From NCBI RefSeq assembly GCF_006345805.1, contig NW_021833381.1, positions 1-28,092 on the forward strand: a stretch of 28,092 nt of DNA. The letters are read 5' to 3'. The DNA is from Octopus sinensis (lineage: Eukaryota). The notes beneath the pieces were generated by a model. It worked only from the letters and a program-made list of their open reading frames with translations, searched no databases and was not told the DNA's origin. A program made the position numbers and the translations under genes. Positions 389 to 22,307 of this stretch are shown piece by piece (within the stretch, counting starts at the first letter, position 1; every line of letters begins with the position of its first letter).

Positions 389-600
389 TTAATAAAAACA
401 AAGACAAGGTATGGTGTTTTAATGGTTCATAAAACATACACATGTCTCGGTAAATGCCCGTCATGATTACATAATAGCAGTTGAAGCATTATATCATCGT
501 GCATATAATGTTTACATATATTATATATATTTACATATATTATATATATATATATTATATATATTATAATATACTTTATTTTAAGCAGCAGAAAATTCAA

Positions 601-652
601 CAAAATCTGTTACTCTCTGAGTTTCTCGTTGCCGTTCATCAGGCATTTTTTG
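601..652 (-). ncRNA. Type-I hammerhead ribozyme-like motif, left arm (core intact)
   Basis: The minus strand reads CAAAAAATGC-CTGATGA-A-CG gcaa CG-A-GAAA-CTC aga GAGT-A-ACAGATTTTG. CUGAUGA and GAAA are intact, stem III is ACUC/GAGU and the cleavage triplet is GUA. Stem I pairs at 7 of 10 positions. Confidence 0.6.
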
Positions 653-663
653 CTAGAATCTAG

Positions 664-709
664 CAAAAACTGTCTGATGACGGCAACGAGACTCAAGTAA
701 CAGATTTTG
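664..709 (+). ncRNA. Type-I hammerhead ribozyme-like motif, right arm (GAAA box damaged)
   Basis: The plus strand reads CAAAAACTGT-CTGATGA-CG gcaa CG-AGA-CTCAAGT-A-ACAGATTTTG. Stem I pairs at 9 of 10 positions and CUGAUGA is intact, but GAAA is reduced to AGA. Confidence 0.5.
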
Positions 710-805
710 TTGAATTTTCTGCTGCTAAAATAAAGCATATTACTCTAACCACTGGTATTGAGTACTCTTTTTTCCACCTTGTTTCACATTTATGTGTTTA
801 CTACG

Positions 806-856
806 GTATATATTATATATATATATATATTATATATATATATAATTATATATATA

Positions 857-889
<33 letters not shown>

Positions 890-906
890 TAATATATTAT
901 ATATAT
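806..906. repeat. (TA)n microsatellite
   Basis: Direct inspection. Confidence 0.95.
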
Positions 907-3787: not shown

Positions 3788-5346
3788 GTTGGCTGGGTGG
3801 CTGGCTGGTTGGTTGGTTGGTTGGTTGGTTGGTTGGTTGGTTGGTTGGTTGGTTGGTTTGCTGATTGGTTGGTTGGTTGGTTGGTTGGTTGTGTGGTTGG
3901 TTGGTTTGTTGGTTGGTTGGCTGGTTGGTTGGTTGGTTGGTTGGTTGGTTGTTGGTTGCTGATTGGTTGGTTGGTTGGTTGGTTGGTTGTGTGGTTGGTT
4001 GGTTTGTTGGTTGGTTGGCTGGTTGGTTGGTTGGTTGGTTGGTTGGTTGGTTGGTTTGCTGATTGGTTGGTTGGTTGGTTGGTTGGTTGGTTTTGGTTGG
4101 TTGGTTGGTTGGTGGTTGGTTGGTGGTTGGTTGGTTGTGTTGTGGTGGTTGGTTTGTTGGTTGGTTGGCTGGTTGGTTTGTTGTGGTTGGTTGGTTGGTT
4201 GTTGGTTTGCTGATTGGCTGGTGGTTGGTTGGTTTTGTGGTGTGGTTTTGGGGTTTGTGGTTGGTTGGCTGTGGTTTGGTTGGTTGGTTGGTTGGTTGGT
4301 TGGGTTGGTTGGTTGGTTGGTTGGTTGGTTGGTTTGGCTGATGGTGGGTGGTTGGTTGGTTGGTGGTGGTTGGTTGTGGTGGTTGGTTGGGTGGTGGGTT
4401 GGTTGGTTGTTGGTTGGTTGGTTGGTTGGTTGGTTGGTTGGTTGGTTGTTGGTTGGTTGGTTTGCTGTATTGGTTGGTTGGTTGGTGGTTGGTGTGGTTG
4501 TTGGTGGTTGGTTGGTTGGCTGGTTGGTTGGTTGGTTGGTGGTTGGTTGGTTGGTGTGGTTGGCTGGTTGGTTGGTTGGTTGGTGGTTGGTTGGTTGGTT
4601 GGTTGGTTGGTTGGTTGGTTGGTTGCTGATTGGTTGGTTGGTGGTTGGTTGGTTGTGTGTTGGTGGTTGTTGGTTGGTTGGATGGTTGGTTGGTGGGTGG
4701 GTGGTTGGTTTGCTGATTGGTTGGTTGTGGTTGGTTGTGTGGTGGTTGGTTTGTTGGTTGGTTGGCTGGTGTTGGTGGTTGGTTGGTGGTTGGTTGGTTG
4801 GTTGGTTGGTTGGTTGGTTGGTTGCTGATTGGTTGGTTGGTTGGTTGGTTGTGTGGTTGGTTGGTTGGTTTGTTAGTTGTTGATGGTTGGTTGGTGGTTG
4901 GTTGGTTGGTTGGTTGGCGGGTGGTTGGTTGGTTGGTTGGTTGTGGTTGGTTGTTGGTTGGTTGTTGGTTGGTTGGCTGGTTGGTTGGCTGTTGGTGGTT
5001 GTTGGCTGGTGGTTGATTGGCTGGTTTGTTGGTGGTTGGTGGCTGGTTGGTGGTTGGTTGGTTGGTTGGCTGGTTGGTTGTTGGTTGGTTGTTTGGTTCG
5101 TTGGTTGGGTGGTGGTTGGTTGGTTGGTTGGTTGGACTGGTTGTTGGTTGGTTGGTTGGTTGGTTGGTTGTTTGGTTGGTTGTTTGGTTGGTTGGTTGGC
5201 TTGTTGGTTGGTTGGCTGGTTGGTTGGTTGGTTGTCTGGTTGGTTGGTTGGTTGGTTGGTTGGTTGGTTGGTTGGTTGGTTGGTTGGTTGGTTGTCTGGT
5301 TGGTTGGTTGGTTGGTTGTTGGTTGGTTGGTTTGTTGGTTGGTTGG
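3788..5346. repeat. About 1.56-kb degenerate (GGTT)n tetranucleotide array
   Basis: Direct inspection; source of the 543-aa QPTN and LVGW ORFs. Confidence 0.98.
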
Positions 5347-5419
5347 TGCGTGAACTGAAAACTCTCACAATCTCGTGATGAATTAGCCAATCACAGATTT
5401 TCACCAAAAGACAGACTCT

Positions 5420-5560
5420 GTAAATTATGAAGGAGGAACAAGGAAAAGAAGGTGGAGGACGACGAGGGGGGAGAAAGAGGAGAATGAGGAGGAGGACGAG
5501 GTGGGGGAAGAGAAGCAGGAGGACGAGGGGGTGCGAAGAGGAGGACCAGGGCGGAAAAGA
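5420..5560. repeat. Purine-rich (GGA/GAG) low-complexity tract
   Basis: Direct inspection. Confidence 0.8.
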
Positions 5561-8715: not shown

Positions 8716-8719
8716 TAAA

Positions 8720-9097
8720 CATGGTTCAGAGTTCAGTCCCACTGCGTGGCACCTTGAGTAAGTGTCTTCTTCTATAGCCTCGGGCCTACCAAAGCCTTGT
8801 GAGTGGATTTGGTAGTCGGAAACTGAAAGAAGCCCGTCGCATATATGTGTGTGTGCGTGTGTGTGTGTGTGTGTGTGTCTGTGTGTGTACATGTGTTCTG
8901 TGTTTGTCCTCCTACCATCACTTGACAAGCGATGTTGGTGTGTTTACGTCTCTGTAACTTGGCGGTTCGGCAAAAGAGGCTGATATAATAAGTAGTAGGC
9001 TTACAAAGAATGCGTCCTGGGGTCGATTTACTCGACTACATGGTGTGCTCCAGCATGGCCACTGTCAGAATACTGAAACAAGTAAAAGAATAAAAGA
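8720..9097 (+). mobile_element. SINE family 1 (tRNA-derived, bipartite with internal microsatellite), 5'-truncated
   Basis: B-box-like agttcagtccc, core ccttgagtaagtgtcttct, (TG)n linker and 3' module ending gaaacaagtaaaagaataaaaga. Aligns with 10024-10440. Confidence 0.9.
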
Positions 9098-9104
9098 TTA
9101 AATA

Positions 9105-10023: not shown

Positions 10024-10440
10024 GGCGCAGGAGTGGCTGTGTGGTAAGTAGCTTGCTAACCAACCACATGGTTCCGGGTTCAGTCCCACTGCGTGGCATC
10101 TTGGGCAAGAGTCTTCTGCTATAGCCCCGGGCTGACCAATGCCTTGTGAGTGGATTTGGTAGACAGAAACTGAAAGAAGCCTGTCATATATATGCATGTA
10201 TATATATGTATGTGTGTGTGTTTGTGTGTCTGTGTTTGTCCCCCTAGCATTGCTTGACAACCGATGCTGGTGTGTTTACGTCCCCGTCACTTAGCGGTTC
10301 GGCAAAAGAGACCGATAGAATAAGTACTGGGCTTACAAAGAATAAGTCCCGGGGTCGATTTGCTGCTCGACTAATGGCGGTGCTCCAGCATAGCCGCAGT
10401 CAAATGACTGAAACAAGTAAAAGAGTAAAAGAGTAAAGAG
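10024..10440 (+). mobile_element. SINE family 1, full-length
   Basis: Starts ggcgcaggagtggctgtgtggt (A-box-like), then ggttcagtccc (B box), cttgggcaagagtcttct (CORE-like), (TA/TG)n linker, and a 3' module ending in (GTAAAAGA)n. Confidence 0.92.
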
Positions 10441-10614: not shown

Positions 10615-10850
10615 TCTCTCTTTCTCTCTCTCTCTTTTACTTGTTTTGGTCATTTGACTGCGGCCATGCTGGAGCACCGCCTTTAGCCGAGCAAATCGAC
10701 CCCGGGACTTATTCTTTGTAAGCCCAGTACTTATTCTATCGGTCTCTTTTGCCGAACCGCTAAATGACGGGGACGTAAACACACCAGCATCGGTTGTCAA
10801 GCAATGCTAGGGGGACAAACACAGACACGCAAACATATACACACACATAC

Positions 10851-10948
<98 letters not shown>

Positions 10949-11111
10949 CGACAGGCGTCTTTCAGTTTCCGTCTACCAAATCCACTCACAAGGCTTTGGT
11001 CAGCCCGAGTCCATAGCAGAAGACACTTGCCCAAGATGCCACGCAGTGGGACTGAACCCGGAACCATGTGGCTGGTAAGCAAGCTACTTACCACACAGCC
11101 ACTTCTGCGCC
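10615..11111 (-). mobile_element. SINE family 1, full-length, opposite orientation
   Basis: Reverse complement of 10024-10440 with an expanded (TA)n linker of about 120 bp. Confidence 0.92.
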
Positions 11112-11225: not shown

Positions 11226-11500
11226 TATAAATAAAAAATAAATAAATAAATGCGCCCTTTTAAAGCCTAGCCAGGCTCATGGGTCCGGTTTCCCGGTTTC
11301 TATGGCATATGTGTTCCCCAGCTGGACGGGACGCCAGTCCATCGCAGCGTTACTCATTTTTGCCAGCTGAGTGGACTGGGGCAACGTGAAATGAAGTGTT
11401 TTGCTCAAGAACACAAAGCGTCACCAGGTCCAGGAATCGAAACCACAATCTTACGATCATGATGCCGACACCCTAACCACTAAGCCACGCGCCTTCACTA
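11226..11500 (-). mobile_element. tRNA-derived SINE A (Meta/CORE-like central domain, tail X) with candidate 9-bp TSD
   Basis: Minus-strand head gtgaaggcgcgTGGCTTAGTGGttagg...GTTTCGATTCC has clear A and B boxes. Core gtgttcttgagcaaaacac...ccactcagctggcaaaaatgagt; (TTTA)n tail. actttgtca occurs at 11217-11225 and 11501-11509. Confidence 0.85.
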
Positions 11501-11578: not shown

Positions 11579-11901
11579 TGGCTCTCCGTCGGTTACGACG
11601 ACGAGTGTTCCTGTTGATCCGATCAACGGAACGGCCAGCTCGTGAAATTAACATGCAAGTGGCTGAGCACTCCACAGACACCTGCACCTTTAACGTAATT
11701 CTCAGGAGATTCAGCGAGACACAGAATGTGACAAATCTGGTCTTTTGAATTACAGGTATGACTCATTTTTTGCCAGCCAAGTGGACAGGAGCAACGTGAA
11801 ATAAAGTATCTTGCTCAAAGACACAAGGCACTGCAAGGTATCGAACTCACGACCTTACGATCTTGAGCTGAATACCTTGATCATTAGCCACGCGCCTTCA
11901 C
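11579..11901 (-). mobile_element. tRNA-derived SINE B (same head and core as SINE A, different tail Y)
   Basis: Head gtgaaggcgcgtggctaatg...agttcgatacc. The core at 11761-11830 is near-identical to 11353-11420, while the 3' part is unrelated to SINE A. Confidence 0.8.
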
Positions 11902-12529: not shown

Positions 12530-13124
12530 TTATTGCCTACAAGGGGCTAAACACAGAGGGGACAAACAAGGACAGACAAATAAATTAAGTCGATTATATC
12601 GACCCCCAGTACGTAACTGCTACTTATTTAATCGACCCCGAAAGTATGAAAGGCAAAGTCGACCTCGGCGGAATTTGAACTCAGAACGTAGCGGCAGACG
12701 AAATACCTATTTCTTTACTATCCCCGAGGGGCTAAACACAGAGGGGACAAACAAGAACAGACAAATAAATTAAGTCGATTATATCGATCCCCAGTACGTA
12801 ACTGCTACTTATTTAATCGACCCCGAAAGTATGAAAGGCAAAGTCGACCTCGGCGGAATTTGAACTCAGAACGTCGCGGCAGACGAAATACCTATTTCTT
12901 TACTATCACCAAGGGGCTAAACACAGAGGGGACAAACAAGGACAGACAAATGAATTAAGTCGATTATATCGACCCCCAGTGCGTAACTGCTACTTATTTA
13001 ATCGACCCCGAAAGTATGAAAGGCAAAGTCGACTTCGGCGGAATTTGATCTCAGAACGTAGCGGTAGACGAAATACGGCTACGCATTTCGCCCGGTGTGC
13101 TAACGTTTCTGCCAGCTCGCCGCC
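12530..13124 (-). mobile_element. Nin-like SINE present as a 3 x 185-bp tandem multimer with a single 5' head
   Basis: aggggctaaac starts at 12542, 12727 and 12912 (exact 185-bp period). The head ggcggcgagctggcagaaacgttagc is present once, at 13090-13124. Confidence 0.92.
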
Positions 13125-16255: not shown

Positions 16256-16260
16256 GTCTG

Positions 16261-16555
16261 TTCCTTCACGAGCCATCCCTGGCTCATAGGGCCGGTTTCC
16301 CGGTTTCCTTGGCGTATAGGTTCCCCACCTGGACGGGACGCCGGTCCGTCGCAGGTGAGCTGCAAGATGCAGGAGGAAAGAGTGAGAGAAAGTTGTCTCG
16401 AAAGAGTCAGCAGAAGTTCGCCATTACCTTCTGCTAAGCAAGGTGGATCTTAGGTGTTTCGCTCATAAACACACACATCACCCGGTCTGAGATTCGAACC
16501 CGCGATACCTCGACCGCGAGTCCTCTGCTCTAACCACTAGGCCATGTGCCTCCAC
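16261..16555 (-). mobile_element. tRNA-derived SINE C (distinct middle, tail X shared with SINE A)
   Basis: Head gtggaggcacaTGGCCTAGTGGttagagc...GGTTCGAATCtc. Plus-strand ggctcatagggccggtttcccggtttcc...ctggacgggacgccggtccgtcgcag matches 11275-11348. Confidence 0.85.
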
Positions 16556-18915: not shown

Positions 18916-19146
18916 TCTATTCTTTCATCTAACTTACCACTGACTCCTTTACCACTCCCCCAAGTATGAATTTTGCGCTATGCCTACCCCAAAAAAGTCC
19001 CCCACCACCACTCCTTTAACCTGCCTAAATGTATAAATGCTAATACAATTCTTGTTAAATAGCTTCCTGAAGATTTCTCTTGAATGAAACAGTACTAGTC
19101 CTGTAGAAGCTCCTTCTATATAATAAATAAATATTATATATATATA

Positions 19147-19189
<43 letters not shown>

Positions 19190-19479: not shown

Positions 19480-19700
19480 CTCTTTACTCTTTTACTTGTT
19501 TCAGTCATTTGGCTATGGCCATGCTGGAGCACCGCCTTTTGTCGAGCTAATCGACCCCAGGGCTTATTCTTTGTAAGCCTAGTACTTATTCTATCGGTCT
19601 CTTTTGCCGAACCGCTAGGTAACGGGGACGTAAACACACCACCATCGGTTATCAAGCGATGTTGGGGGGACAAACACAGACACACAAACATATACACACA
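19480..19700 (-). mobile_element. SINE family 1, 3' module followed by expanded (TA)n linker
   Basis: tcttttacttgtttcagtcatttggctatggccatgctggagcaccgcc...gggggacaaacacagac aligns with 10632-10830. Confidence 0.9.
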
Positions 19701-19719
19701 CATGCATATATATACATAC

Positions 19720-19763
<44 letters not shown>

Positions 19764-19796
19764 ATATATAATATATATATTATATATATATATATA

Positions 19797-20609: not shown

Positions 20610-20948
20610 GTCTAAACTCTTCTTGCTTATACATCATGTGTCCACCTTGTCGTCCTACTCACAACTTAGTATTATTAGATCAACCTTTCTCTGTGTTTGT
20701 CAGCTGGTAAAGAGGCCATCGGGTATATTCTTTCATATTCTCCACCGCCCTTCACCTCCGCTCTTTTCTTCATTCTGTCTCTTTCCCAGCTGTCACTAAA
20801 TGTCCAACGCTTTGTCTTCTCACAACATGATGGCTAGGGAGCTCAACCTGGCTTTTGTTTCGTTTTCAATAACTTTTCTTATATAATAACCATATTATAT
20901 ATTATCATTGTGTTATTTTATAACTTTTCTCATAACTTTGACATTGAT

Positions 20949-21324
20949 ACTCTTTACTCTTTTCCTTGTTTCAGTCATTTGACTGCGGCCATGCTGGAGC
21001 ACCGCCTTTAGTCGAGCAACTCGACCCCGGAACTTATTCTTTGTAAGCCCAGTACTTATTCTATCGGTCTCTTTTGCCGAATGGCTAAGTAACGGGGACA
21101 TAACCCACACCAGCATCGGTTGTCAAGCAATGCTAGGGGGACAAAACAGACAACACAACACACACACGCATATATATACATATATACGACGGCTTCTTTC
21201 AGTTTCCGTCTACCAAATCCACTCACAAGGCTTTGGTCGGTCCGGTGCTATAGTAGAAGACAACCGGCCCAGTTGCCACGCAGTGGACTGAACCCGGAAC
21301 CATGTGGTTGGGAAGCAAGCTTCT
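20949..21324 (-). mobile_element. SINE family 1, chimeric copy at the duplication junction
   Basis: Its 3' module matches the 21895-22126 copy, while its 5' module ends like head A (gggaagcaagcttctagcacaaatt). Confidence 0.85.
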
Positions 21325-21894
21325 AGCACAAATTACTTCTTTCAAAGTTGTTATTCACACATTCACTTGTTTAGGTTGAACTGCGATGAATGGTTAGAGA
21401 AAAAAACCTAGCTGTTTTCTGCAATACATTTACATCTAAACTTTTTATTGGCCTTTCAATACTACTGCGGATCCCCAATTTACTATTTTGCTAACAGTGG
21501 ACTCCCAAAAATCTCATATGGCCTTCTATGAGTCATATGACCCCGGTTGAGAGTCACAGGTCTAAACTCTTCTTGCTTATACATCATGTGTCCACCTTGT
21601 CCGTCCTACTCACAACTTAGTATTATTAGATCAACCTTTCTCTGTGTTTGTCAGCTGGTAAAGAGGCCATCGGGTATATTCTTTCATATTCTCCACCGCC
21701 CTTCACCTCCGCTCTTTTCTCTTCATTCTGTCTCTTTTCCCCTGTCACTAAATGTCCAACGCTTTGTCTTCTCACAACATGATGGCTAGGGAGCTCAACC
21801 TGGCTTTTGTTTCGTTTTCAATACTTTCTTATATAATAACCTTTATATATTATCATTGTGTTTTTTTAACTTTTCTCATAACTTTGACATTGAT

Positions 21895-22294
21895 ACTCTT
21901 TACTCTTTTCCTTGTTTCATCATTTGACTGCGGCCATGCTGGAGCACCGCCTTTAGTCGAGCACTCGACCCCGGAACTTATTCTTTTGTAAACCCAGTAC
22001 TTATTCTATCGGTCTTTTTTGCCGAATGGCTAAGTAACGGGGACATAAACACACCAGCATCGGTTGTCAAGCAATGCTAGGGGGACAAACCAGACACACA
22101 AACACACACGCATATATATACATATAACGACGGGCTTCTTTCAGTTTCCGTCTACCAAATCCGCCACTCACAAGGCTTTGTCGGCCAGAGGCTATAGTAG
22201 AAGACACTTGCCCAAGGTGCCACGCAGTAGGACTGAACCCGGATAATCATGTGGTTGGTAAGCAAGCTACTTACCACACAGCCACTCCTACGCC
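21895..22294 (-). mobile_element. SINE family 1, full-length (head B)
   Basis: Complete from the tail tactcttttccttgtttc to the head ccacacagccactcctacgcc. Confidence 0.9.
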
Positions 22295-22307
22295 TGATAA
22301 TTATATT

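What the first reader, a model, noticed from the sequence alone, without database searches (positions are those of the whole stretch)
568..741. 174-bp palindrome that presents a hammerhead-ribozyme-like motif in both polarities
Seen: a near-perfect fold-back. The minus strand of the left arm has intact CUGAUGA and GAAA cores, a CG-GCAA-CG stem II, an ACUC/GAGU stem III and a GUA site, but an imperfect stem I (7/10). The plus strand of the right arm has a 9/10 stem I and CUGAUGA but a damaged GAAA. The lesions are complementary, so the two-arm consensus is a well-formed minimal type-I hammerhead. Established: Penelope-like retroelements carry minimal type-I hammerheads and form inverted terminal arrangements, and viroid-like RNAs are rod-shaped with hammerheads in both polarities. 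Inference: this is either an inverted Penelope terminus or a small ribozyme-bearing non-autonomous (retrozyme-like) hairpin element. A transcript of either strand could switch between a long dsRNA hairpin (ribozyme off; Dicer/ADAR substrate) and a self-cleaving fold.
Basis: partly seen in the sequence, partly recalled or inferred. Interest (0 to 1): 0.85.

Follow-up and report, generated by a model that had tools for sequence, protein, structure and literature searches.

The report
Palindromic octopus repeat, decayed hammerhead motif
A 176-bp near-perfect DNA palindrome in an octopus genome is one copy of a dispersed repeat, most likely two head-to-head ends of a Penelope-type retroelement; its hammerhead-ribozyme look-alike is broken in both arms and not conserved in a relative, so it is an ordinary transposon relic, not a working ribozyme switch.

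Summary
The palindrome is real. It spans window 567-742, has 88.5% self-complementarity, and folds at -111/-113 kcal/mol (z -23/-19). The window is SSR- and SINE-rich octopus DNA.

- No Rfam hammerhead model matches, even at E<=10 on a single arm.
- The hammerhead fold of the isolated arm (-3.2 to -6.5 kcal/mol) loses to an alternative fold (-9.7).
- In a full transcript the hammerhead fold is not populated.
- A motif of this quality turns up by chance in about 1-2% of random 28-kb windows.

By luck I found one related palindrome in Octopus vulgaris (L028:11582-11711). It keeps the outer arm, GAAAC, the GUA site and the within-arm helix, but has UCAACGA in place of CUGAUGA. The catalytic-box region is the least conserved part, 47-53% identity against 76-82% elsewhere.

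The layout fits a Penelope-like (PLE) twin insertion. Both 3' ends face outward, each carries AATAAA, the flanks are microsatellite, and the relative has an extra tail at one end only. PLEs make up 6.8% of the O. vulgaris genome. A MITE (miniature inverted-repeat transposable element) remains a serious rival.

Verdict: partly supported. This is a transposon relic of a known kind. No active ribozyme or hairpin/ribozyme switch is supported.

The parts
567..742 (.). Whole palindromic element (176 bp).
   Evidence: 88.5% self-reverse-complement identity over 183 columns; MFE -111/-113 kcal/mol, z -23/-19.
567..657 (-). Left arm. The element-sense (hammerhead-sense) strand is the minus strand, reading from the centre outward to 567.
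659..742 (+). Right arm. The element-sense strand is the plus strand, reading from the centre outward to 742.
658..658 (.). Centre of symmetry (single unpaired A within CTAGA-A-TCTAG).
601..652 (-). Hammerhead-like motif of the left arm. Stem I strands 643-652/601-610 (7/10 paired). CUGAUGA 636-642. Hairpin ACG-GCAA-CGA 626-635 (2 bp plus an A.A mismatch). GAAA 622-625. Helix III ACUC-AGA-GAGU, i.e. A622 then 612-621. GUA site with A17 at 611.
   Evidence: Sequence; descriptor hit; fold energies; no Rfam hammerhead hit.
664..709 (+). Damaged hammerhead-like motif of the right arm. Stem I 664-673/700-709 (9/10 paired). CUGAUGA 674-680. Hairpin CG-GCAA-CG 681-688. GAAA reduced to GA (690-691). 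GUA 697-699.
   Evidence: Sequence; alignments; no Rfam hammerhead hit.
729..734 (+). AATAAA near the outward 3' end of the right arm.
   Evidence: Sequence; conserved in the O. vulgaris relative.
575..580 (-). AATAAA near the outward 3' end of the left arm (TTTATT on the plus strand).
   Evidence: Sequence.
485..566 (.). TA-rich microsatellite-like left flank (probable target or tail context). ATATTA at 561-566 repeats at 737-742. This is a possible but unprovable target-site duplication in TA-rich sequence.
   Evidence: Sequence.
806..905 (.). (TA)n-rich microsatellite, 63 nt to the right of the element.
   Evidence: Sequence.

Best explanation
The palindrome is a dead copy of a dispersed, non-coding octopus repeat.

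Proposed origin (inferred):
- It consists of two copies of the last ~85-90 nt of a retroelement, joined head-to-head, with both 3' ends facing outward.
- The most likely origin is a Penelope-like (PLE-type) insertion into TA-rich microsatellite.
- In that process both nicked target strands prime reverse transcription and both cDNAs are strongly 5'-truncated. Alternatively the second arm was copied from the first.
- The hammerhead-like motif lies where a PLE terminus carries its hammerhead. It is best read as a decayed, atypically compact relic, or partly a chance resemblance.

Consequences at this locus:
- Neither arm can self-cleave.
- Any read-through transcript would fold into an ~87-bp double-stranded hairpin, a generic ADAR/Dicer substrate. 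It would not switch to a ribozyme fold.

What is shown: the palindrome, its family membership, the defects of both motifs, and the energetics.
What is inferred: the retroelement/PLE origin and the insertion mechanism.
For: Palindrome and family:
- The palindrome is a discrete unit with unrelated flanks.
- The host is an octopus. SINE-derived peptides hit O. vulgaris proteins, and SINE copies are 80-92% identical to O. vulgaris loci.
- A related palindrome was found in only 40 kb of O. vulgaris DNA, at L028:11582-11711. blastn gives 79% over 68 nt, E 6e-9; nhmmer gives E 2e-17 and 5e-16.

Shared and differing features of the two elements:
- Shared: GAAACUC..GAGUA|ACAG(A/U)UUUUGU...UUUCUGCUGC...AAUAAAG(U/C)AU, read from the centre outward.
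- The relative is asymmetric. A 31-nt centre is homologous to the window's inner arm in one orientation only.
- Its right arm has a ~23-30-nt outer segment (CTGCTTTTTAATAAAGTATTTAAATA) that the left arm lacks.
- Its flanks are (TG)n on the left and (TA)n(CA)n on the right, an inverted arrangement.

Agreement with published PLE biology:
- PLE protein nicks and extends both target strands.
- There is an optional 30-40-bp tail.
- The hammerhead cut site lies about 85-92 nt upstream of the RT start site (PMC11167929).
- Inverted 5'-truncated copies occur, the tail is often at one end only, and targets are microsatellites (PMC8557442).
- Dual opposite-strand minimal hammerheads 100-700 bp apart have been described (PMC4209133).
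- PLEs cover 6.83% of the O. vulgaris genome.

Inactivity of the motif:
- No Rfam hammerhead hit.
- The hammerhead fold is -3.2 to -6.5 kcal/mol against an MFE of -9.7. The MFE pairs UGCC with GGCA and buries the CUGAUGA box.
- The full hairpin is -111/-113 kcal/mol, and P(helix II pair) is 1e-15.

Hints that a real hammerhead was ancestral:
- The helix II hairpin is kept between the two elements with one compensatory change (G-C to A-U), an A.A to A-U change at its base, and GNRA loops in both (GCAA, GGAA). P is about 0.01-0.06.
- A second, better hammerhead-like motif at 19061-19111 sits in the same position relative to AAUAAA(UA)n.
Against: - No RT or GIY-YIG coding remnant is linked to either element. 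The window has no credible coding ORFs. An RT-like stretch in L028 gave no Pfam hit.
- Features that define published PLE minimal hammerheads are missing: the G10.1-C11.1 pair, a 6-8-bp helix II, and a palindromic helix III/loop 3.
- The relative lacks the CUGAUGA box. That region is the least conserved: 8-9 of 17 positions against 76-82% elsewhere, Fisher p 0.03-0.06.
- Both window arms end at the same central position. That is unexpected for two independent 5' truncations.
- The target-site duplication is undecidable in the TA-rich flank.
Confidence: 0.5

Rival explanations
1. It is a palindromic MITE (miniature inverted-repeat transposable element), a foldback non-autonomous DNA transposon of the MADE1 type. 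The element would be essentially two long terminal inverted repeats, moved by a Tc1/mariner-type transposase into TA sites. The hammerhead-like motif would be a chance resemblance.
For: - The whole element is an inverted repeat, symmetric to within one base of the centre.
- It is small, AT-rich, multi-copy and sits in TA-rich sequence. A TA duplication (567-568/741-742) is possible.
- Tc1-Mariner covers 119 Mb of the O. vulgaris genome and has recently active families.
- The relative's asymmetric centre could be a secondary central deletion, which is typical of palindromes.
- The chance rate of such a hammerhead-like hit is not negligible, at 0.007-0.02 per window.
Against: - The relative lacks one terminus, yet its arms are 97% complementary, which implies a young copy.
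- The termini (ATATAC...) resemble no known superfamily end, though that comparison rests on memory and was not tested.
- The outward-facing AATAAA and the inverted microsatellite flanks of the relative look like retroelement tails.
- A second hammerhead-like motif with the same AAUAAA(UA)n context occurs in the window and is not palindromic.
- Annotated MITEs cover only 0.19 Mb of the genome.
Confidence: 0.28
2. It is a head-to-head pair of 3' ends of a non-PLE retroposon, such as a stringent-type LINE or its SINE partner. The conserved small GNRA-capped hairpin would be the reverse-transcriptase recognition stem-loop, not hammerhead helix II.
For: - A conserved hairpin with one compensatory change and GNRA loops in both elements.
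- AATAAA and microsatellite-like tails.
- LINEs plus SINEs make up about 25% of the O. vulgaris genome.
- The catalytic box is not conserved.
Against: - Symmetric head-to-head 3' ends are a hallmark of PLEs. LINE twin priming inverts a different part of the element.
- The arm shows no similarity to the SINE copies abundant in the window.
Confidence: 0.1
3. It is the reader's functional model: an active or recently active ribozyme-bearing hairpin element (retrozyme- or viroid-like). Its transcripts would switch between a long dsRNA hairpin and a self-cleaving hammerhead fold.
For: - All hammerhead boxes occur in the correct order in the left-arm minus strand.
- Natural type-I hammerheads with a mismatch at the base of helix II exist, such as axolotl HHR_Amex2 (PMC7229834).
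Against: - Both arms are defective.
- No Rfam hammerhead hit.
- The hammerhead fold is disfavoured even in the isolated arm, and is absent (1e-15) in the full transcript.
- The hammerhead-sense arm is always transcribed after its complement.
- There is no tandem copy, so it is not a retrozyme.
- CUGAUGA is absent from the relative.
Confidence: 0.03
4. It is a one-off local inverted duplication (replication fold-back) or an assembly artefact, not a mobile element.
For: SSR-rich sequence is prone to template switching. Only one copy occurs in the window.
Against: - A homologous palindrome lies at an unrelated locus in an independent chromosome-level O. vulgaris assembly.
- The arms have diverged by four indel sites (counted from the arm sequences) and several substitutions.
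- The flanks are unrelated, so this is not a read-length fold-back chimera.
Confidence: 0.04
5. It is a hairpin-RNA or miRNA gene.
For: The hairpin is very stable. There are weak Rfam matches to many miRNA precursor models.
Against: - All matches are 14-30 bits against gathering scores of 47-170, and they spread over unrelated miRNA families. This is the generic response to any long hairpin.
- No expression data were available.
Confidence: 0.05

Closest known systems
Penelope-like element (PLE) insertions: inverted 5'-truncated copies with an optional 30-40-bp tail, and the minimal type-I hammerheads of their pLTRs (Cervera & de la Pena 2014, PMC4209133; Craig et al. 2021, PMC8557442; PMC11167929)
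   Same: - Head-to-head inverted copies with the 3' ends outward.
- Microsatellite context.
- An extra outer segment on one arm only in the relative.
- A hammerhead-like motif in sense orientation a few tens of nt from the 3' end.
- Opposite-strand motif pairs close together.
- Abundance of PLEs in octopus.
   Different: - No RT/EN or pLTR continuity was shown.
- Helix II is 2-3 bp rather than 6-8.
- There is no G10.1-C11.1 pair.
- Helix III is a 4-bp hairpin rather than 0-2 bp with a palindromic loop.
- The tail is about 23-30 nt.
- Both window arms stop at the same central point.
Canonical metazoan type-I hammerheads of non-LTR retrozymes and satellite DNAs (Rfam Hammerhead_1; PMC7229834)
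   Same: - The order of the parts: stem I, CUGAUGA, helix II, GAAA, helix III, GUA, stem I.
- A mismatch at the base of helix II also occurs in axolotl HHR_Amex2.
   Different: - Not in tandem repeats.
- No Rfam match.
- No loop-loop tertiary contacts can be recognised.
- Both copies are defective.
Palindromic MITEs such as mariner-derived MADE1 (comparison from my own knowledge)
   Same: - A short, AT-rich, multi-copy element that is almost entirely two inverted arms.
- It forms a near-perfect hairpin if transcribed.
   Different: - No defined target-site duplication or known terminal motif.
- One relative lacks a terminus.
- The outward-facing AATAAA and microsatellite tails look retroelement-like.
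Viroid-like and HDV-like circular RNAs with hammerheads in both polarities
   Same: A rod-like fold and a hammerhead-like motif readable on both strands.
   Different: - It is a genomic DNA palindrome, so the two polarities are identical by construction.
- Pairing is Watson-Crick on both strands, which indicates a DNA-level origin.
- There is no evidence of circular RNA.

Membership tests
Hammerhead ribozyme (type I) | Conserved core boxes C3-U4-G5-A6-N7-G8-A9 and G12-A13-A14, with A15.1-U16.1 and an NUH cleavage site. | tested here: inconclusive
   All are present only in the left-arm minus strand (636-642, 622-625, GUA ending at 611). The right arm has GA instead of GAAA. The O. vulgaris relative has UCAACGA instead of CUGAUGA.
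Hammerhead ribozyme (type I) | Three helices around the core, with helix II closed at 10.1-11.1 directly next to A9 and G12. | tested here: not met
   In the left arm, A.A sits at 10.1/11.1 with 2 bp and a GCAA loop, and stem I is 7/10 with a C.A mismatch next to the core. The hammerhead register scores -3.2 kcal/mol. The isolated arm prefers a fold that buries the CUGAUGA box, at -9.7.
Hammerhead ribozyme (type I) | A match to the curated covariance models (Rfam hammerhead families, e.g. Hammerhead_1). | tested here: not met
   No hammerhead family was listed at gathering score. None was listed at E<=10 on 411 nt or on each arm alone. Caveat: PLE minimal hammerheads may also escape these models.
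Hammerhead ribozyme (type I) | Preferential conservation of the core, and covariation of the stems, across relatives. | tested here: not met
   Only two elements (three informative arms) were available. CUGAUGA plus helix II is 47-53% identical against 76-82% for the rest. There is one compensatory pair, which 183 of 500 shuffles reach. Retention of the hairpin and GNRA loop has P about 0.01-0.06.
Hammerhead ribozyme (type I) | Self-cleavage after H17. | not testable with these tools
   Requires in vitro transcription and cleavage assays.
PLE-associated minimal hammerhead (Cervera & de la Pena 2014) | Location in the pLTR of an element that encodes RT and a GIY-YIG endonuclease. | tested here: inconclusive
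   No RT/EN remnant lies near either element. However, most genomic minimal hammerheads are solo truncated copies, so absence is not decisive.
PLE-associated minimal hammerhead (Cervera & de la Pena 2014) | [quoted passage not shown] | tested here: not met
   Helix II is 2-3 bp. 10.1/11.1 is A.A in the window and A-U in the relative. If the A after A9 is read as the extra nucleotide, the pair becomes C-G and an extra A precedes G12.
PLE-associated minimal hammerhead (Cervera & de la Pena 2014) | Palindromic 15.2-16.2 / loop 3, allowing dimeric action. | tested here: not met
   The window left arm has CUC-AGA-GAG, a monomeric hairpin that is not palindromic. The relative's CUCUGAG is only quasi-palindromic.
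PLE insertion architecture | An inverted 5'-truncated copy head-to-head with another copy, 3' ends outward. An optional 30-40-bp tail, often at one end only. Microsatellite target. | tested here: met
   The orientation of both arms, the outward AATAAA, and the TA-rich flanks fit. The relative has unequal arms and a ~23-30-nt extra segment on one arm only, with microsatellite flanks. This is consistent with the architecture but not unique to PLEs.
Non-LTR retrozyme | Tandem direct repeats (~170-400 nt), each carrying a type-I hammerhead. | tested here: not met
   The arm sequence occurs once per strand in the window. TRF finds no such array at this locus.
MITE | Terminal inverted repeats, a constant target-site duplication, small size, and many copies with conserved ends. 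| tested here: inconclusive
   The inverted repeats and small size are met. The duplication (TA or ATATTA) is undecidable in the TA-rich flank. Only two copies were found, and one lacks an end.
miRNA / hairpin-RNA precursor | A match to a curated family, or discrete small RNAs. | tested here: not met
   Only sub-threshold generic hairpin matches were found, 14-30 bits against gathering scores of 47-170. Small-RNA data were not available.

The most novel reading that the evidence does not exclude
Octopus genomes carry an undescribed, very compact class of type-I hammerhead. It would have a 3-4-position helix II closed by a tetraloop, a mismatch or A-U at 10.1/11.1, and a 4-bp helix III. It would sit at the 3' ends of Penelope-like or derived non-autonomous elements. 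Curated models miss it. Head-to-head insertion of these ends would create long perfect RNA hairpins that feed the cephalopod ADAR editing or small-RNA machinery. The window would then hold two examples: the palindrome at 567-742 and the motif at 19061-19111.
Probability: 0.12. Interest if true: 0.55.

Novelty: new member of a known kind. Interest (0 to 1): 0.25.

Why it matters
If the main reading is right, this is routine transposon archaeology. It is one more truncated, inverted retroelement terminus in a genome where Penelope-like elements cover about 7% and all repeats 66%. Its practical value lies in annotation:

- Such palindromes should be masked as repeats, not called as ribozymes or miRNA genes.
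- They mark places where long double-stranded RNA could arise in an animal known for heavy A-to-I editing.

The one point of wider interest concerns two compact hammerhead-like motifs in the same 28 kb. Both escape Rfam, and both lie just upstream of AAUAAA(UA)n. This hints that cephalopod PLE-type ends may carry a hammerhead variant that current descriptors do not cover. A genome-wide family alignment could settle that quickly.

Tried and rejected
Searches for more copies:
- The arm 23-mer, a two-arm gapped pattern and a single-arm gapped pattern in viral contigs found nothing.
- A 20-mer in metagenome contigs gave 27 loci. All were 20-31-nt chance matches.
- Two gapped patterns in genome contigs found nothing.
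- Two pattern calls failed on syntax.

Peptide route to spurious ORFs in other copies:
- The 42-aa ORF found nothing.
- A concatenated six-frame translation found nothing.
- P0003 is not on record.
- Ten window ORFs are not in the protein collection, so the window's own contig could not be extended.

The relative was found only by chance. I fetched two O. vulgaris loci through SINE-derived proteins. nhmmer with the four arms found no further copy in 68 kb.

Literature:
- Nothing on octopus hammerheads.
- Lunse et al. 2017 is not held.
- Craig et al. have no supplement held.
- The O. vulgaris repeat paper's supplement contains no sequences.

Looking for a PLE link:
- An RT-like stretch at L028:15287-15502(-), 'GIAMGSSLGPTFATFYL', gave no Pfam hit. 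I do not count it as evidence.

Readings considered and rejected:
- Assembly fold-back artefact: the arms have diverged, the flanks are unrelated, and an independent assembly has a homologue.
- Retrozyme: there is no tandem array.
- The 185-bp tandem repeat at 12540-13076 as a retrozyme: it has no hammerhead boxes.
- miRNA family membership: only sub-threshold generic hairpin hits.
Full report
**What is there.** Window 567-742 is a 176-nt near-perfect palindrome centred on A658, one base wider on each side than reported.
- Four collinear inverted-repeat blocks cover it.
- blastn of the element against itself in reverse complement gives 88.5% identity over 183 columns.
- Judging from the two arm sequences, the arms differ by four indel sites and a few substitutions (MAFFT's own arm alignment merges the middle two).
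- As RNA either strand folds into one long hairpin: -111 kcal/mol (z -23.1) on the + strand and -113 kcal/mol (z -19.1) on the - strand. No shuffle comes close.
- Sequence outside 567 and 742 is unrelated, so this is a discrete unit and not a read-length fold-back.
- No second copy of the arm exists in the 28 kb.

**Whose genome.**
- The window is packed with di- to tetranucleotide microsatellites, including a 1.6-kb (GTTG)n array.
- It has several copies of a ~400-bp SINE-like repeat and no credible coding ORFs.
- A peptide read from that repeat hits only 'Hypothetical predicted protein [Octopus vulgaris]'.
- The repeat copies are 80-92% identical to copies in two O. vulgaris chromosome loci that I fetched, L028 and L029.
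- The window is therefore octopus or a close relative. The exact species and contig could not be identified.

*Left arm, minus strand (601-652):*

CAAAAAAUGC / CUGAUGA / A-CG-GCAA-CG-A / GAAA / CUC-AGA-GAG-U / A | ACAGAUUUUG

*Right arm, plus strand (664-709):* a better stem I (9/10), but GA in place of GAAA and a shortened helix III.

- Neither arm is intact. Helix II is 2 bp with an A.A mismatch next to the core.
- 'Both polarities' adds nothing, because the two strands of a palindrome are the same sequence.
- No Rfam hammerhead family matches at gathering score, at E<=10 on 411 nt, or on each arm alone. Only generic miRNA-hairpin matches far below threshold appear.
- The isolated left-arm RNA prefers a fold that pairs UGCC with GGCA and buries the CUGAUGA box (-9.7 kcal/mol, z -1.35).
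- The hammerhead register scores -3.2 kcal/mol. The best fold that keeps helices II and III scores -6.5.
- In the full minus-strand transcript the probability of a helix II pair is 1e-15.
- The hammerhead-sense strand runs from the centre outward in both arms. In any read-through transcript it is therefore the second arm to be made, and its perfect complement is already waiting. The proposed hairpin/ribozyme switch has no thermodynamic or co-transcriptional basis.

**How surprising is the motif?** I wrote a relaxed type-I descriptor that the left arm just passes:
- CUGANGA.
- Helix II of at least 2 bp, allowing one unpaired base on each side.
- GAAA.
- Helix III of at least 2 bp beyond A15.1-U16.1.
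- H17 (any base but G at position 17).
- Stem I at least 7/10.

Random windows of the same composition give 0.013-0.020 hits per 28 kb on both strands, and 0.0074 at or above the left arm's quality. For a motif picked out by a scan of many windows this is weak evidence.

**A relative, found by luck.** All direct searches for more copies failed. These covered viral, metagenome and prokaryote collections and peptide tricks. Within the 40 kb of O. vulgaris DNA fetched through the SINE proteins, however, L028:11582-11711 holds a homologous palindrome.
- Similarity: blastn 79% over 68 nt, E 6e-9; nhmmer E 2e-17 and 5e-16.
- Its arms, 11582-11619 and 11651-11688, are 97% complementary.
- Read from the centre outward, the right arm is:

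  ...ACAAAACUGU UCAACGA ACA-GGAA-UGU GAAA CUC-U-GAG-U A|ACAGUUUUUGUGAUAUUUCUGCUGC UUUUUAAUAAAGUAUUUAAAUA(UA)n(CA)n
- It aligns without gaps to the window's left arm through the whole 'core'.
- One hit in 40 kb suggests an abundant family. It also shows that the palindromic layout is a family trait, not an assembly artefact.

**What the comparison says about the ribozyme.**
- Conserved between the two elements: the within-arm helix ('stem I'), GAAAC, the helix III segment, GUA, and everything outward to AAUAAAG(U/C)AU.
- Not conserved: the CUGAUGA box, which is UCAACGA in the relative.
- CUGAUGA plus helix II is 47-53% identical, against 76-82% for the rest (Fisher p 0.03-0.06).
- In favour of an ancestral structure, the small hairpin is kept with one compensatory change (G-C to A-U), a base pair A-U where the window has A.A, and a GNRA loop in both (GCAA, GGAA). 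A simple substitution simulation gives P about 0.06 for three pairs, and about 0.01-0.016 if the GNRA loop is also required.
- Formal pair counting on the three informative arms shows 81.6% of cells paired but only one double change, which 183 of 500 shuffles reach.
- With two elements the question cannot be settled. The hairpin could equally be a reverse-transcriptase recognition stem-loop of a retroposon tail.

**What kind of element.** Several features point to a retroelement, specifically the Penelope-like mode of insertion.
- Both arms have their sense 3' ends outward, each with AATAAA about 10 nt from the end (729-734 on +; 575-580 on -).
- The element is embedded in TA-rich microsatellite.
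- In the relative the flanks are (TG)n on the left and (TA)n(CA)n on the right. The simple repeats themselves are inverted, like tails.
- The relative is asymmetric from what looks like a young age. Its 31-nt centre is homologous to the window's inner arm in one orientation only, and its right arm carries about 23-30 extra outer nucleotides that the left arm lacks.

Published work matches this picture.
- PLE protein nicks and extends both target strands.
- Genomic copies carry an optional 30-40-bp tail that comes from two RT start sites.
- The hammerhead cut site lies some 85-92 nt upstream of those sites (PMC11167929).
- Inverted 5'-truncated copies, a tail at one end only, and microsatellite targets are typical (PMC8557442).
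- Pairs of minimal hammerheads on opposite strands 100-700 bp apart were noted for truncated PLEs (PMC4209133).
- PLEs cover 191 Mb, or 6.83%, of the O. vulgaris genome (PMC13282606 supplement).

Against this reading:
- I could show no RT or endonuclease remnant near either element.
- The motif lacks the hallmarks of published PLE minimal hammerheads: the G10.1-C11.1 pair, a 6-8-bp helix II, and a palindromic helix III.
- Both window arms stop at exactly the same central position. That fits a MITE, or a copy-back event, better than two independent truncations.
- A palindromic MITE is therefore a serious rival. Tc1-Mariner covers 119 Mb in this genome. The relative's asymmetry could come from a central deletion plus loss of one end.
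- The target-site duplication (TA, or ATATTA at 561-566/737-742) cannot be decided in TA-rich flanks.

**A second motif.** The same descriptor found one further hit that nobody had flagged, at window 19061-19111 (+):

AGCUUC / CUGAAGA / U-UUC-UCUU-GAA-U / GAAA / CAG-UACUAGUC-CUG-U / A | GAAGCU

- It has six contiguous stem I pairs.
- Its loop 3 contains the palindrome ACUAGU.
- AAUAAAUAAAUAUUA(UA)n follows 17 nt downstream.
- Hits of at least this quality occur 1e-4 to 7e-4 times per random window.
- It too has no Rfam match and no other copy in the 68 kb.
- Its architecture and its position relative to the tail resemble the palindrome's arm. This raises the chance that both derive from hammerhead-bearing retroelement ends, and that octopus carries a compact variant which current models miss.

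**Verdict.**
'Inverted Penelope-type terminus' is the best available reading (about 0.5), with a MITE second (about 0.28).
- The retrozyme, viroid-like and switching-ribozyme ideas are not supported.
- At this locus the motif is dead.
- It is a new member of a known kind of repeat, of low to moderate interest.
- The decisive step is a whole-genome family alignment in Octopus, which these tools could not reach.

Noticed in passing
window 19061-19111 (+): A second, unflagged hammerhead-like motif that is better formed than the reported one: AGCUUC/CUGAAGA/U-UUC-UCUU-GAA-U/GAAA/CAG-UACUAGUC-CUG-U/A|GAAGCU. Stem I has 6 contiguous pairs, loop 3 contains a palindrome, and AAUAAAUAAAUAUUA(UA)n follows 17 nt downstream. 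Random expectation is 1e-4 to 7e-4 per window. It has no Rfam hit and no other copy in 68 kb.
   Followed up: partly
L028:11582-11711 (Octopus vulgaris OX597820.1): A related palindromic element. Its arms are 38 nt and 97% complementary, and its 31-nt centre is asymmetric. An extra AATAAA-bearing outer segment occurs on the right arm only. The flanks are (TG)n and (TA)n(CA)n.
   Followed up: yes
window ~8719-9102, 10029-10436, 10633-11106, 19483-19769, 20948-21327, 21893-22305 (both orientations): Multiple copies of a ~400-bp SINE-like repeat, 75-92% identical to copies in O. vulgaris L028/L029. Each is usually adjoined by (CA)n/(TA)n. Spurious ORFs across them resemble 'hypothetical predicted proteins' annotated in O. 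vulgaris.
   Followed up: partly
window 12540-13076: A 185-bp unit repeated 2.9 times in tandem at 96% identity. It contains no hammerhead boxes and is unclassified.
   Followed up: partly
window 3788-5347: A 1.6-kb (GTTG)n-type microsatellite array of about 400 copies with strong GC and AT skew. It produces long spurious ORFs on both strands.
   Followed up: no
window 16259-16555 and 11248-11498: Two further interspersed repeats, 87-91% identical to stretches of L028 (142-445, 19553-19837) and L029 (14552-14802). Unclassified.
   Followed up: no
L029:18201-18328 (-): A U4 spliceosomal snRNA gene or pseudogene in the O. vulgaris locus (Rfam 69.8 bits, E 1e-13).
   Followed up: no
L028:15287-15502 (-) and 18943-19170 (-): Degraded ORF fragments that look, by eye only, like a reverse-transcriptase motif (GIAMGSSLGPTFATFYL) and a mariner-type transposase (MFMQDSAPS). 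The RT-like region gave no Pfam hit. The transposase-like one was not tested.
   Followed up: partly
L029:3708-3830 and 5354-5476 (+): Two near-identical copies of a segment that contains CTGATGAAGCTTAAAAAA(G/A)GCAGAAATCCAG, lying within or near the RabGAP-TBC gene. It is a local duplication and not hammerhead-like.
   Followed up: no
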